From Podarcis bocagei (lineage: Eukaryota), in assembly GCA_964188305.1 (NCBI GenBank), contig OZ076887.1: DNA of 64,000 nucleotides; one strand, 5' to 3'. The notes below the pieces were generated by a model. The model saw nothing but the letters and a program-made list of their open reading frames with translations, searched no databases and had not been told where the DNA came from. Position numbers and translations under genes: made by a program. Positions 39,494-46,189 of this stretch are shown one piece after another; within the stretch, counting starts at the first letter, position 1; each line of letters begins with the position of its first letter.

Positions 39494-40003
39494 ACTTTCA
39501 TGCCCTATGTTCTCTACCAATATTCCCAGTTGCAAAATACTTTCAGTGGCACTTAAGCACAAAACACTTTCACCTAACCATGGCAAGGCAAGTGAGGAAA
39601 TGGGGTTCCCTTCCACAAATAAGAGCTAGCTGAACCTTGCATTCTCTGAAGAAAGAGAATGATACTTTCATGCCCTATGTTCTCTACCAATATTCCCAGT
39701 TGCAAAATAATTTCAGTGGCACTTAAGCGCAAAACACTTTCACCTAACCATGGCAAGGCAAGCGAGGAAATGGGGTTCCCTTCCACAAATAAGAGCTAGC
39801 TGAACCTTGCATTCTCTGAAGAAAGAGAATGATATTTTCATGCCCTATGTTCTCTACCAATATTCCCAGTTGCAAAATAATTTCAGTGGCACTTAAGCGC
39901 AAAACACTTTCACCTAACCATGGCAAGGCAAGCGAGGAAATGGGGTTCCCTTCCACAAATAAGAGCTAGCTGAACCTTGCATTCTCTGAAGAAAGAGAAT
40001 GAT
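39494..40003. repeat. Three tandem copies of a 170-bp unit
   Basis: Units start at about 39494, 39664 and 39834 and differ at only a few positions. Confidence 0.95.
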
Positions 40004-43516: not shown

Positions 43517-43723
<207 letters not shown>

Positions 43724-43759
43724 TCAGAAACTGTCAGAATTTCAGGAGTGCAAAGATTA

Positions 43760-45718
43760 CCGTATTTTTCGCCCTATAGGACGCACCGGCCCATAGGACG
43801 CACCTAGTTTTTTGGGGGGGAAATCAAGGGAAAAAAATTTATTCCCCCCCCCCCCCCAGGTTTGCGCAGCCATCCCCAAGCTAGAAGAGAGAGACAGAGC
43901 GCTCCATCTCCCTCTTCTGCCTTCAGGGACAGCATCTCTAGCCTCCGTGGGGCAGCGGCTTGCCCCGCTGTCCCCCGAGCTTATAGGGCTGGCGATGGGG
44001 AGAAGCAAGCTTGCTTCTCCCCCCGCCAGCCTCCAGATCAGGTCCGGGAATAGCGGGGTGGTGGCGCTCTGCCTCCCCGCTATCCCCCGAGCTTGTGGGG
44101 CTGGTGGGGGGGGGAAGCAAGCTTGCTCCCCCCCAAGCCTTCAGATCAGGTCAGGGAATAGCGGGGTGGCGGCGCTGCGCCTTCCTGCTATCCCCCAAGC
44201 TTATGGGCTGCAGGCTGCTGCCTGCAAGCCTTGCGACCCCGCAGGACCTCGCGCCGGGATCCGGGGGGTGGCACGGAGCTGCAGGAAGCCCTGGAGCGCA
44301 GGCAGCTCCGCGCCACCCTCCGAAGCCCCGCGCAGCTTCGCGCCGGGATCGGGAGGGTGGCGCGGAGGTGCCTGTGCTCCAGGGCTTCTTGCAGCTCCGC
44401 ACCACCCTCCGGAGCCCCGCGCAGCTTCGCGCCGGGATCCGGAGGGTGGCACGGAGCTACAAGAAGCCCTGGAGCGCAGGCAGCTCTGCGCCACCCTCCA
44501 GAGCCCCGCGCAGCTTCGCGCCGGGATCGGGAGGGTGGCGCGGAGCTGCAAGAAGCCCTGGAGCGCAGGCAGCTCTGCGCCACCCTCCGGAGCCCCGCGC
44601 AGCTTCGCGCCGGGATCGGGAGGGTGGCGCGGAGCTACAAGAAGCCCTGGAGCGCAGGCAGCTCTGCGCCACCCTCCAGAGCCCCGCGCAGCTTCGCGCC
44701 GGGATCGGGAGGGTGGCGCGGAGCTGCAAGAAGCCCTGGAGCGCAGGCAGCTCTGCGCCACCCTCCGGAGCCCCGCGCAGCTTCGCGCCGGGATCGGGAG
44801 GGTGGCGCGGAGGTGCCTGTGCTCCAGGGCTTCTTGCAGCTCCGCGCCACCCTCCAGAGCCCCGCGCAGCTTCGCGCCGGGATCGGGAGGGTGGCGCGGA
44901 GGTGCCTGTGCTCCAGGGCTTCTTGCAGCTCCGCGCCACCCTCCAGAGCCCCGCGCAGCTTCGCGCCGGGATCGGGAGGGTGGCGCGGAGGTGCCTGTGC
45001 TCCAGGGCTTCTTGCAGCTCCGCGCCACCCTCCAGAGCCCCGCGCAGCTTCGCGCCGGGATCGGGAGGGTGGCGCGGAGGTGCCTGTGCTCCAGGGCTTC
45101 TTGCAGCTCCGTGCCACCCTCCAGAGCCCCGCGCAGCTTCGCGCCGGGATCGGGAGGGTGGCGCGGAGCTGCAAGAAGCCCTGGAGCACAGGCAGCTCCG
45201 CACCACCCTCTGGAGCTCCGCGCAGCTTCGCGCCGGGATCGGGAGGGTGGCGCGGAGGTGCCTGTGCTCCAGGGCTTCTTGCAGCTCCGCGCCACCCTCC
45301 AGAGCCCCGCGCAGCTTCGCGCCGGGATCGGGAGGGTGGCGCGGAGGTGCCTGTGCTCCAGGGCTTCTTGCAGCTCCGCGCCACCCTCCAGAGCCCCACG
45401 CAGCTTCGCGCCGGGATCGGGAGGGTGGCGCGGAGGTGCCTGTGCTCCAGGGCTTCTTGCAGCTCCGTGCCACCCTCCAGAGCCCCGCGCAGCTTCGCGC
45501 CGGGATCGGGAGGGTGGCGCGGAGCTGCAAGAAGCCCTGGAGCACAGGCAGCTCCGCACCACCCTCTGGAGCTCCGCGCAGCTTCGCGCCGGGATCGGGA
45601 GGGTGGCGCGGAGCTGCAAGAAGCCCGGGAAAGCCTGCATTCGCCCCATAGGACGCACACACATTTCCCCTTCATTTTTGGAGGGGAAAAAGTGCATCCT
45701 ATAGGGCGAAAAATACGG
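43760..45718. mobile_element. Non-autonomous Tc2/pogo-like DNA transposon carrying GC-rich tandem arrays
   Basis: TIR CCGTATTTTTCGCCCTATAGGACGCAC / GTGCATCCTATAGGGCGAAAAATACGG; TA on both sides (43758-43759, 45719-45720). Confidence 0.9.
44241..45626. repeat. 89-bp quasi-palindromic minisatellite, ~15.5 units
   Basis: Unit starts at 44332, 44421, 44510 ... 45578 with an 89-bp period. Confidence 0.97.
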
Positions 45719-46189
45719 TATTTTTAGAGATTTGGTCAACTTGAAAGTTGTCATGATCCTTTCACACACTAGGTACTAGATGCAAAGAGACTGCACAATA
45801 AAGCTGAACATTAAAAAAACACAGGTGGCTGAAAATTATCCTGAGAACTAGGATTACAATGATCATATATGCATAAAATCCAAAATTCTACTAACTTATC
45901 CAACACTTCAATCTCCCAGGACATTCTATATAAGATCTTAAAGTAGCTGTCTTATTGCAAAAGAATTTTAGACATATACTTGAAAGAGAAGTTGCTGAGT
46001 TACAACTCATTACCAAACTAAAAACTATGGAGATACCTGGTCTGAATAGAGATATTGGATTCATGTCCTATTATACATTCTAAATCTAATTTTGGTCATC
46101 TATCCCTTTAAAAATCCCTTGCCCTTCCCTGTGGAACCAACTGCTATCAGTAACAGTCATCAACAGTTATAAGGTTGCAGCGACCTCTG

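What the first reader, a model, noticed from the sequence alone, without database searches (positions are those of the whole stretch)
44241..45626. Hairpin minisatellite whose 19-nt loop is present in both orientations, giving a binary pattern along the array
Seen: each 89-bp unit has 20-bp inner arms GGAGGGTGGCGCGGAG(C/G)TGC ... GCAGCTCCGCGCCACCCTCC. The loop is either AAGAAGCCCTGGAGC(G/A)CAG (state A) or its reverse complement CTGTGCTCCAGGGCTTCTT (state B). The order is A B A A A A B B B B A B B B A plus a partial A. The asymmetric outer arms (GCCGGGATC vs GAGCCCCGC) keep their orientation in every unit, so only the loop is inverted, not the whole unit. Inference: hairpin-mediated micro-inversion by template switching, then spread by unit duplication or conversion. 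One ancestral flip could explain it all, or flipping may be recurrent. No recombinase gene is evident.
Basis: seen in the sequence. Interest (0 to 1): 0.75.

Follow-up and report, generated by a model that had tools for sequence, protein, structure and literature searches.

The report
Flipped-loop hairpin repeats in lizard transposon
A short non-coding transposon in a lizard gene intron carries 15 tandem 89-base hairpin units whose 19-base loop points one way in some units and the other way in the rest. This is best read as one or two copying errors at a hairpin, later multiplied by block duplication, so it is a clean example of a known mutation process and not a switch.

Summary
At 44253-45626 there are 15 full units plus one partial unit, spaced exactly 89 bp apart, in the order A B A A A A B B B B A B B B A (+A). 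The loop of the B units is the exact reverse complement (19/19) of the loop of A units 11 and 15. The asymmetric outer stem keeps its orientation in all 15 units.

The array lies inside a 1.96-kb non-coding element with terminal inverted repeats (TIR) flanked by TA (43760-45718). That element sits in an intron of a WD40-repeat gene on the minus strand.

The "binary pattern" is mostly block duplication. The string compresses to A0 B* (A1a A1b)x2 B (B B B' A2)x2. All 8 B units share a private stem base, which is G at unit column 30. One flip is therefore enough.

A second flip, back from B to A2, is equally parsimonious. It would explain the loop inversion and the loss of that stem mismatch in one template switch. 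The data cannot decide between one and two flips.

Stem mismatches are never mirrored onto the other arm, which argues against frequent or programmed flipping.

I found no recombinase, no protein domain and no RNA family. Reads and other genomic copies could not be reached. Other first-reader notes of this scan report related hairpin arrays elsewhere in this genome, one with a loop flip.

Verdict: a new member of a known kind, of modest interest.

The parts
43758..43759 (.). TA next to the left end (candidate target-site duplication)
   Evidence: TA directly flanks both terminal inverted repeats. A 2-bp match is weak evidence on its own.
43760..43786 (+). Left terminal inverted repeat, CCGTATTTTTCGCCCTATAGGACGCAC
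   Evidence: The first 22 nt are exact at both ends with 0 expected by chance. Over 27 nt, 26 match, and the one mismatch is a CpG transition.
43760..45718 (.). Whole non-autonomous TIR element (MITE-like), 1,959 bp, 70% G+C
   Evidence: It is bounded by the TIR pair. G+C is 0.70 against 0.37 in the flanks. The long ORFs across it have no Pfam domain.
43963..44207 (.). Upstream 108-bp repeat, 2.2 copies, itself built of palindromes
   Evidence: Tandem Repeats Finder and the alignment of the copies.
44253..45626 (.). 89-bp hairpin minisatellite, 15 full units plus a partial 16th. Unit i starts at 44253+89(i-1).
44431..44786 (.). Units 3-6: a 178-bp higher-order repeat (A1a A1b) x2, all with loop orientation A
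   Evidence: Units 3-4 and 5-6 differ at 2 of 178 bases, and units 4 and 6 are identical.
44876..45231 (.). Units 8-11: first copy of the 356-bp higher-order repeat B B B' A2
   Evidence: It differs from units 12-15 at 1 of 356 bases. Units 10 and 14 are identical, and so are units 11 and 15.
45232..45587 (.). Units 12-15: second copy of the 356-bp higher-order repeat B B B' A2
45588..45626 (.). Partial unit 16: a left arm plus the first 9 to 11 loop bases in orientation A, running straight into unique element sequence
   Evidence: This shows that orientation A is continuous with the non-repeated interior, so A is probably ancestral.
45692..45718 (-). Right terminal inverted repeat
45719..45720 (.). 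TA next to the right end
43532..43672 (-). Neighbouring host exon (WD40-repeat gene, PHIP according to earlier notes). The element's left end lies about 88 nt upstream of its candidate acceptor site (about 74 nt if the alternative AG at about 43686 is used).
   Evidence: The minus-strand ORF has weak WD40-type Pfam hits, and other minus-strand ORFs in the window hit WD40 at 1e-13. An AG acceptor and a GTAAGG donor were read. The exon limits are inferred.

Best explanation
The array is junk DNA that keeps a record of a rare replication error. It is not a device.

A MITE-like element with TIRs flanked by TA carried a GC-rich hairpin sequence in orientation A. That sequence grew into an 89-bp minisatellite. 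In one unit, DNA synthesis switched template across the perfect 20-bp inner stem. The nascent strand copied the loop from the complementary strand, or from itself folded back, and then returned. This replaced the 19-nt loop with its reverse complement and changed nothing else, giving the B type.

The B lineage also carries a C-to-G change in the left arm, 4 nt from the loop. Unequal exchange or replication slippage then multiplied single units and blocks of 2 and 4 units. That produced the present string A0 B* (A1a A1b)x2 B (B B B' A2)x2 plus a partial A.

One flip is enough. A second template switch, turning a B-type unit back into A2, is possible.

Shown here: the exact inversion, the conserved outer stem orientation, the block duplications, and the full linkage of loop orientation with the stem base. 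Inferred: the template-switch mechanism, the A-to-B polarity, and the lack of function.
For: Evidence that the loop is inverted and only the loop:
- The reverse complement is exact at 19/19, against 6/19 direct identity.
- All units are exactly 89 bp.
- The outer stem asymmetry is kept in 15 of 15 units.
- The stems are strong hairpins as single-stranded DNA, at -31 to -39 kcal/mol with z-scores of -4 to -7.

Evidence for spread by duplication:
- Units 8-11 and 12-15 differ at 1 of 356 bases.
- Units 3-4 and 5-6 differ at 2 of 178 bases.
- Units 7, 8, 9 and 12 are identical.

Evidence for a single origin of B:
- All 8 B units have G at unit column 30 and all 7 A units have C.
- Exhaustive parsimony over 135,135 trees with all characters gives 3 best trees. 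Each has one orientation change and monophyletic B units.

Evidence on polarity and on flip frequency:
- The partial terminal unit and the first unit are both A. The partial unit runs into unique sequence.
- The B mismatch at column 30 and the A1 mismatch at column 60 are never found mirrored on the other arm in any unit. No flip whose endpoints lie outside those sites has happened since they arose.

Evidence against a functional reading:
- The two longest of the array's ORFs have no Pfam domain.
- No Rfam family reaches its gathering score.

Loop inversion by template switching at hairpins is a described mutation class (PMC8794818; PMC5453318, listed but not read).
Against: The mechanism is inferred from the end product. 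With perfect stems, a template switch and a reciprocal exchange between the arms leave the same product.

When orientation and column 30 are left out, flank sites group unit 2 (B*) with A2, which implies two orientation changes. That result rests on a single step at CpG sites, which mutate fast.

There are no reads, no other copies of the family and no orthologous loci. Polymorphism, somatic change and assembly accuracy are therefore untested.
Confidence: 0.78

Rival explanations
1. Flipping recurred within this array, with at least two events. A B-type unit was turned back to orientation A by a template switch that copied the reverse complement of loop plus right arm over left arm plus loop. 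This created A2 (units 11 and 15).
For: A2 columns 14-52 are the exact reverse complement of B columns 34-72. A single switch would therefore explain all 14 clustered differences in columns 30-52, including removal of the column-30 mismatch.

A2, B* and B share the loop variant CACAG/CTGTG. A2 and B* also share A at column 63 and G at column 73. Parsimony without orientation and column 30 gives an (A2, B*) clade and two orientation changes in all 3 best trees.

The pattern of a compensating stem change together with a loop inversion is the signature that PMC8794818 calls the strongest support for template switching.
Against: The support is one parsimony step, at CpG sites where parallel transitions are expected. 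At least 7 of the 13 variable non-loop sites are CpG transitions. With all characters, one flip is preferred.

Before the 356-bp duplication, A2 sat at the array edge next to the partial A unit, where old unflipped units are expected. A2 differs from the main B type at 4 non-loop sites besides column 30, so it is not a recent derivative of it.
Confidence: 0.35
2. The product is the same but the mechanism differs. Reciprocal intramolecular recombination, or cruciform cutting and rejoining between the two 20-bp arms, inverted the loop. This is the mechanism proposed for small inversions in plastid hairpins.
For: The perfect 20-bp inverted repeats flanking a 19-nt spacer are the substrate proposed for plastid microinversions (PMC3123225 background). 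The product cannot be told apart from that of a template switch.
Against: By general knowledge, not tested here, twenty base pairs is far below the usual minimum for homologous recombination in vertebrate nuclei. A reciprocal exchange would move stem mismatches to the other arm, and no mirrored mismatch is seen. If A2 does derive from B, the loss of the mismatch fits copying and not exchange.
Confidence: 0.12
3. The array is a programmed or somatic switch. The loop orientation is actively flipped, and the A/B string carries information or regulates the host gene.
For: I found no direct evidence. The array is CpG-rich (observed/expected 0.81) and lies inside an intron close to an exon.
Against: The element encodes no recombinase or any other domain. 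A 19-nt invertible segment with 20-bp arms fits no known site-specific system. Orientation is fully linked to a neighbouring base and to duplicated blocks, as expected for inheritance and not for switching. Stem mismatches are not homogenised.
Confidence: 0.03
4. The pattern is an assembly or sequencing artefact at strong hairpins.
For: Palindromic, GC-rich tandem arrays are hard to assemble. Copy number and block order could be wrong. I could not lay reads on the region.
Against: An artefact would not give exact 19-nt inversions linked to a private stem base in 8 units, exact 89-bp phasing, and clean 178-bp and 356-bp blocks.
Confidence: 0.04

Closest known systems
Template-switch mutations (TSM) that invert hairpin loops (Loytynoja and Goldman 2017, PMC5453318; Monttinen and Loytynoja 2022, PMC8794818)
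   Same: The loop is replaced by its exact reverse complement between perfectly pairing stem halves. Length is kept and there is no footprint in the stems. A compensating stem change may have occurred together with a loop inversion (A2 against B).
   Different: The described cases are single hairpins in rRNA, microRNA and unique primate sequence, and the loops are mostly 4-8 nt. Here the loop is 19 nt. The hairpin is also the unit of a minisatellite, so the flipped form was copied many times and lies beside the unflipped form in one array.
Hairpin-associated small inversions in plastid non-coding DNA (Kelchner and Wendel; Kim and Lee; Catalano et al., as summarised in PMC3123225)
   Same: A short spacer between inverted repeats is found in both orientations. 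More stable hairpins flip more often. Homoplasy is the main question.
   Different: Those cases are in organelle genomes and are compared between species. This case is nuclear, in a vertebrate, and the comparison is between paralogous units. The survey of bird introns in PMC3123225 found its inversion hotspots were not associated with stem-loops.
Tandem-repeat-containing MITEs and foldback elements (DTC84 of Donax trunculus, PMC3879986; Tetris of Drosophila virilis, PMC4079207)
   Same: Both are non-autonomous TIR elements whose interior is a short tandem array that can vary in copy number.
   Different: I read only the titles and abstracts of these papers. Neither abstract mentions hairpin units with loops in two orientations. 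The families share no sequence that I could test.
Flip/flop forms of parvovirus and poxvirus terminal hairpins (from my own knowledge, not tested here)
   Same: The unpaired part of a hairpin exists in two orientations that are reverse complements of each other.
   Different: Those forms arise at molecule ends by hairpin transfer during replication and stay at about 1:1. This case involves internal chromosomal units with fixed, inherited states.
Higher-order repeat structure of satellites and minisatellites
   Same: Blocks of 2 and 4 units were duplicated as a whole, with 1-2 differences between the copies.
   Different: Nothing differs in kind. This ordinary process explains most of the "binary pattern".

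Membership tests
Template-switch loop inversion (TSM) | The derived segment is the exact reverse complement of the ancestral segment at the same position | tested here: met
   The B loop equals the reverse complement of the A2 loop at 19/19, and direct identity is 6/19. Against the A1 loop it is 18/19, and the one difference is a CpG transition.
Template-switch loop inversion (TSM) | The source and target overlap both halves of a pairing stem, and loop length is maintained (criteria in PMC8794818) | tested here: met
   There is a perfect 20-bp inner stem on both sides. All units are 89 bp and all loops are 19 nt.
Template-switch loop inversion (TSM) | A linked change in the stem is explained by the same copying event (a compensating mutation plus loop inversion) | tested here: inconclusive
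   A2 columns 14-52 equal the reverse complement of B columns 34-72, which would remove the column-30 mismatch. The direction of change is not settled, because one and two flips are equally parsimonious.
Template-switch loop inversion (TSM) | The event arose during DNA replication by a polymerase switching template | not testable with these tools
   Only the end product is visible.
Tc1/mariner-type MITE with internal tandem repeats | Terminal inverted repeats | tested here: met
   22 of 22 bases are exact and 26 of 27 match overall, at 43760-43786 and 45692-45718.
Tc1/mariner-type MITE with internal tandem repeats | TA target-site duplication | tested here: inconclusive
   TA is present on both sides. 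However, a 2-bp match has a 1 in 16 chance, and no empty site was available.
Tc1/mariner-type MITE with internal tandem repeats | No transposase coding capacity | tested here: met
   The interior consists only of repeats. The 630-aa and 522-aa ORFs have no Pfam hit.
Tc1/mariner-type MITE with internal tandem repeats | Many dispersed copies with the same ends, and similarity of the TIRs to an autonomous Tc1/mariner element | not testable with these tools
   There is only one copy in the window. Earlier first-reader notes of this scan report similar MITE families elsewhere in the genome, but I could not see those sequences. The public collections I could scan are not eukaryotic.
Site-specific invertible DNA switch | A recombinase encoded nearby, and recombination sites as inverted repeats around a functional segment | tested here: not met
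   The two longest of the element's ORFs have no protein domain. ORFs listed across 36-54 kb show only host WD40 exon fragments and repeat ORFs; only four minus-strand ORFs were scanned against Pfam.
microRNA or other structured RNA family | A match to a curated covariance model at its gathering score | tested here: not met
   The best match is mir-3180 at 50 bits against a gathering score of 99. All 60 matches are below threshold, occur on both strands and are generic GC-hairpin matches.

The most novel reading that the evidence does not exclude
Loop flipping recurs in these MITE-borne hairpin minisatellites. Under this reading the array holds both a forward flip and a flip-back (B to A2) that also repaired a stem mismatch. 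That is the rare signature of a compensating change together with a loop inversion. If the family has many hairpin units genome-wide, as earlier first-reader notes suggest (one reports another array whose loop flips midway), it would offer a natural multi-copy system. It could then be used to measure the rate, tract length and direction of short template switches in a vertebrate germ line.
Probability: 0.3. Interest if true: 0.5.

Novelty: new member of a known kind. Interest (0 to 1): 0.3.

Why it matters
Short template switches are thought to create clustered mutations, perfect hairpins and even new microRNA genes. Clear single-event examples with long loops are scarce, and their rate is hard to measure.

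A minisatellite whose unit is itself a strong hairpin shows the flipped and unflipped forms side by side, each with internal markers. The same element family is said to be spread through this genome. That makes it a convenient place to count such events and to ask whether they copy one arm onto the other.

The finding says nothing new about gene regulation or about any molecular machine.

There is also a practical point. The array is open in all six reading frames, is CpG-rich and gives sub-threshold microRNA-like matches. It could therefore mislead gene, CpG-island and microRNA predictors.

Tried and rejected
**Reads and runs.** Afterwards, I sent the 22-nt TIR and a 20-nt stem pattern from inside that stretch to the DNA search.

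**Other copies of the family.**
- An exact TIR scan of metagenome, genome (bacterial and archaeal) and viral collections found nothing.
- A 20-nt stem scan of metagenomes gave 37 single hits in GC-rich contigs. None carried the loop, linker or TIR motifs, so they are chance matches.
- These collections are not expected to hold lizard DNA, so the blanks mean nothing.

**RNA families.** An Rfam scan with permissive filters gave only sub-threshold, both-strand microRNA-like matches. I rejected these as generic hairpin matches.

**Protein domains.** A Pfam scan of the two longest array ORFs found nothing. The open frames are a by-product of GC-rich repeats.

**Whole-unit inversion.** I rejected this idea because the outer stem asymmetry is constant in all units.

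**Arms changing together.** I looked for units in which both arms changed in step within this array and found none. The column-30 and column-60 mismatches persist unmirrored.

**Literature.** A search for lizard or Podarcis MITE minisatellites found nothing specific.

**Earlier findings.** A look-up by sequence was blank.

Full report
**What is there**

Tandem Repeats Finder reports an 89-bp array at 44302-45617 with 14.8 copies and 92% matches. It also reports a 108-bp repeat just upstream, at 43963-44207. Anchoring on GCCGGGATC gives 16 occurrences at exactly 89-bp spacing from 44253 to 45588.

I re-phased the unit to start 4 nt before the GCCGGGATC anchor (unit 1 at 44249), so that each unit opens with TCGC at the foot of the left arm. 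In that phase each unit has these parts:
- a 34-nt left arm
- a 19-nt loop
- a 34-nt right arm
- a 2-nt linker

The inner 20 bp of the stem pair perfectly in the consensus. The outer part carries three fixed asymmetries. These asymmetries point the same way in all 15 units. The inverted segment is therefore the loop plus at most part of the perfect inner stem, and never the whole unit.

The B loop is the exact reverse complement of the loop of units 11 and 15, at 19/19, while the direct identity is 6/19. As single-stranded DNA the units fold at -31 to -39 kcal/mol, with z-scores of -4 to -7 against shuffles. The stem 16-mer occurs 31 times in the window against 0.01 expected.

**Where it sits**

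The array is the interior of an element bounded by CCGTATTTTTCGCCCTATAGGA. This sequence is exact at 43760-43781 and, inverted, at 45697-45718, with none expected by chance. The inverted repeat extends to 27 nt with one CpG mismatch, and TA flanks both ends.

The element is 1,959 bp long and 70% G+C, in a 37% G+C neighbourhood. Its CpG observed/expected ratio is 0.76, and 0.81 in the array, against 0.17-0.27 in the flanks. The long ORFs across it are a by-product of GC-rich repeats: the two longest have no Pfam match. It therefore looks like a young, non-autonomous, TA-flanked TIR element (MITE-like) with tandem-repeat cargo.

Earlier notes of this scan call the genome a lizard (one says wall lizard) and the gene PHIP, and they report MITEs with hairpin-minisatellite interiors elsewhere in the genome. 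I could confirm only two of these points. Minus-strand ORFs in the window carry WD40 repeats at E = 1e-13. A minus-strand exon at about 43532-43672 lies just beside the element.

**The "binary pattern" is mostly copied blocks**

The pairwise differences between units show the following:
- Units 7, 8, 9 and 12 are identical.
- Units 10 and 14 are identical.
- Units 11 and 15 are identical.
- Units 4 and 6 are identical.
- Units 8-11 differ from units 12-15 at 1 of 356 bases.
- Units 3-4 differ from units 5-6 at 2 of 178 bases.

The string therefore compresses to A0 B* (A1a A1b)x2 B (B B B' A2)x2 plus a partial A. Before the two block duplications it read roughly A0 B* A1a A1b B B B B' A2. That leaves little independent information in the pattern.

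**How many flips**

All 8 B units carry G at unit column 30, in the left arm 4 nt from the loop. All 7 A units carry C there. All B units also share the loop variant CTGTG. A2 has the mirror form CACAG, whereas A0 and A1 have CGCAG.

I ran exhaustive parsimony over all 135,135 unrooted trees of the nine unit haplotypes. The results were:

| Characters used | Best trees | Orientation changes | Grouping |
|---|---|---|---|
| All | 3 | 1 | B units monophyletic |
| Without orientation | 6 | 1 in half, 2 in half | split |
| Without orientation and column 30 | 3 | 2 | unit 2 (B*) with A2 |

The last result wins by a single step, and that step rests on CpG sites. At least 7 of the 13 variable non-loop sites are CpG transitions, so parallel change is expected.

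The two-flip history has one attraction. A2 columns 14-52 are the exact reverse complement of B columns 34-72. One template switch from a B-type unit would therefore both flip the loop and remove the column-30 mismatch.

Counted that way, the one-flip and two-flip histories need the same number of events. My conclusion is that one flip suffices, two are not excluded, and this array alone cannot decide.

**Polarity and frequency**

The first unit and the terminal partial unit are both A, and the partial unit runs straight into unique element sequence. Orientation A is therefore probably ancestral.

Two stem mismatches have been inherited through many copies: column 30 in the 8 B units and column 60 in the 4 A1 units. 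Neither has been repaired or moved to the opposite arm. Since these markers arose, no flip with endpoints outside them has occurred. This argues against frequent or programmed flipping.

**Mechanism**

The product is an exact inversion of a spacer between perfect inverted repeats, with length preserved. That is what a short template switch during DNA synthesis produces. Monttinen and Loytynoja list "loop inversion only" and "compensating mutation plus loop inversion" among the patterns explained by one such event. They note that the latter is extremely rare and that most inverted loops they found were 4 nt long, with some of 7-8 nt (PMC8794818).

Plastid hairpin inversions are the classical parallel. 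In bird nuclear introns, by contrast, the inversion hotspots were not associated with stem-loops (PMC3123225).

A reciprocal exchange between the arms would give the same product and cannot be excluded. However, 20 bp is short for recombination, which is general knowledge and was not tested here. The unmirrored mismatches also favour copying, or no event at all.

Nothing points to a recombinase or to a known RNA family. The best Rfam match scores 50 bits against a gathering score of 99, and the matches fall on both strands.

**What could not be done**

I therefore have no reads, no polymorphism data and no independent check of the assembly. The collections open to pattern scans are microbial or viral and gave blanks or chance hits. 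As a result I could not examine other copies of the family.

**Verdict**

The structure is real and neatly readable. It is a new example of a known mutation class, inside a known type of element (a MITE with tandem-repeat cargo), and most of its apparent pattern comes from ordinary block duplication.

Interest is modest. Its value would rise if a genome-wide census showed recurrent flips that could be used to measure template switching. The scan has noted related hairpin arrays on other DNA of this genome, including one first-reader note of a loop that flips midway through another array. I could not check any of these.

Noticed in passing
window 43532-43672 (- strand) and 43760: A host exon (WD40-repeat gene, PHIP according to earlier notes) has a GTAAGG donor at about 43531 and a candidate AG acceptor at about 43672 or 43686. 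The transposon's left end lies only about 75-88 nt upstream of that acceptor. The pre-mRNA would therefore carry 15 strong hairpins in the intron upstream of the acceptor; the nearest one starts about 580 nt from it.
   Followed up: partly
window 44253-45626: The array is CpG-island-like: 74% G+C and CpG observed/expected 0.81, against 0.17-0.27 in the flanks. Either the insertion is young or the array escapes germ-line methylation. Most variable sites are nevertheless CpG transitions.
   Followed up: partly
window 43812-45769, both strands: All six reading frames are open across the array, with ORFs of 346-630 aa, and the two longest have no Pfam domain. This is a trap for gene predictors.
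   Followed up: yes
window 43963-44207: The upstream 108-bp repeat (2.2 copies) is also made of palindromes, for example an arm pair centred on AAGCTT. Between copies a and b, an A-to-G change in one arm is matched by a T-to-C change in the other arm, plus a 1-nt indel. This hints at arm-to-arm copying in the same element.
   Followed up: partly
window 39494-40003: There is a 170-bp tandem repeat of 3.0 copies at 98% identity, about 4 kb from the element. I did not examine it further.
   Followed up: no
window 45084-45191 and 45440-45547: Sub-threshold Rfam matches to mir-3180 (50 bits against a gathering score of 99, E = 9e-07) fall on the inter-unit hairpins. Similar matches occur on the opposite strand, so they are generic GC-hairpin resemblance and no evidence of a microRNA.
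   Followed up: yes
window 43771-43804 and 45640-45660: The subterminal motif GCCC(T/C)ATAGGACGCAC is repeated twice inside the left end and once, in the same orientation, near the right end. These may be subterminal transposase-binding repeats.
   Followed up: no
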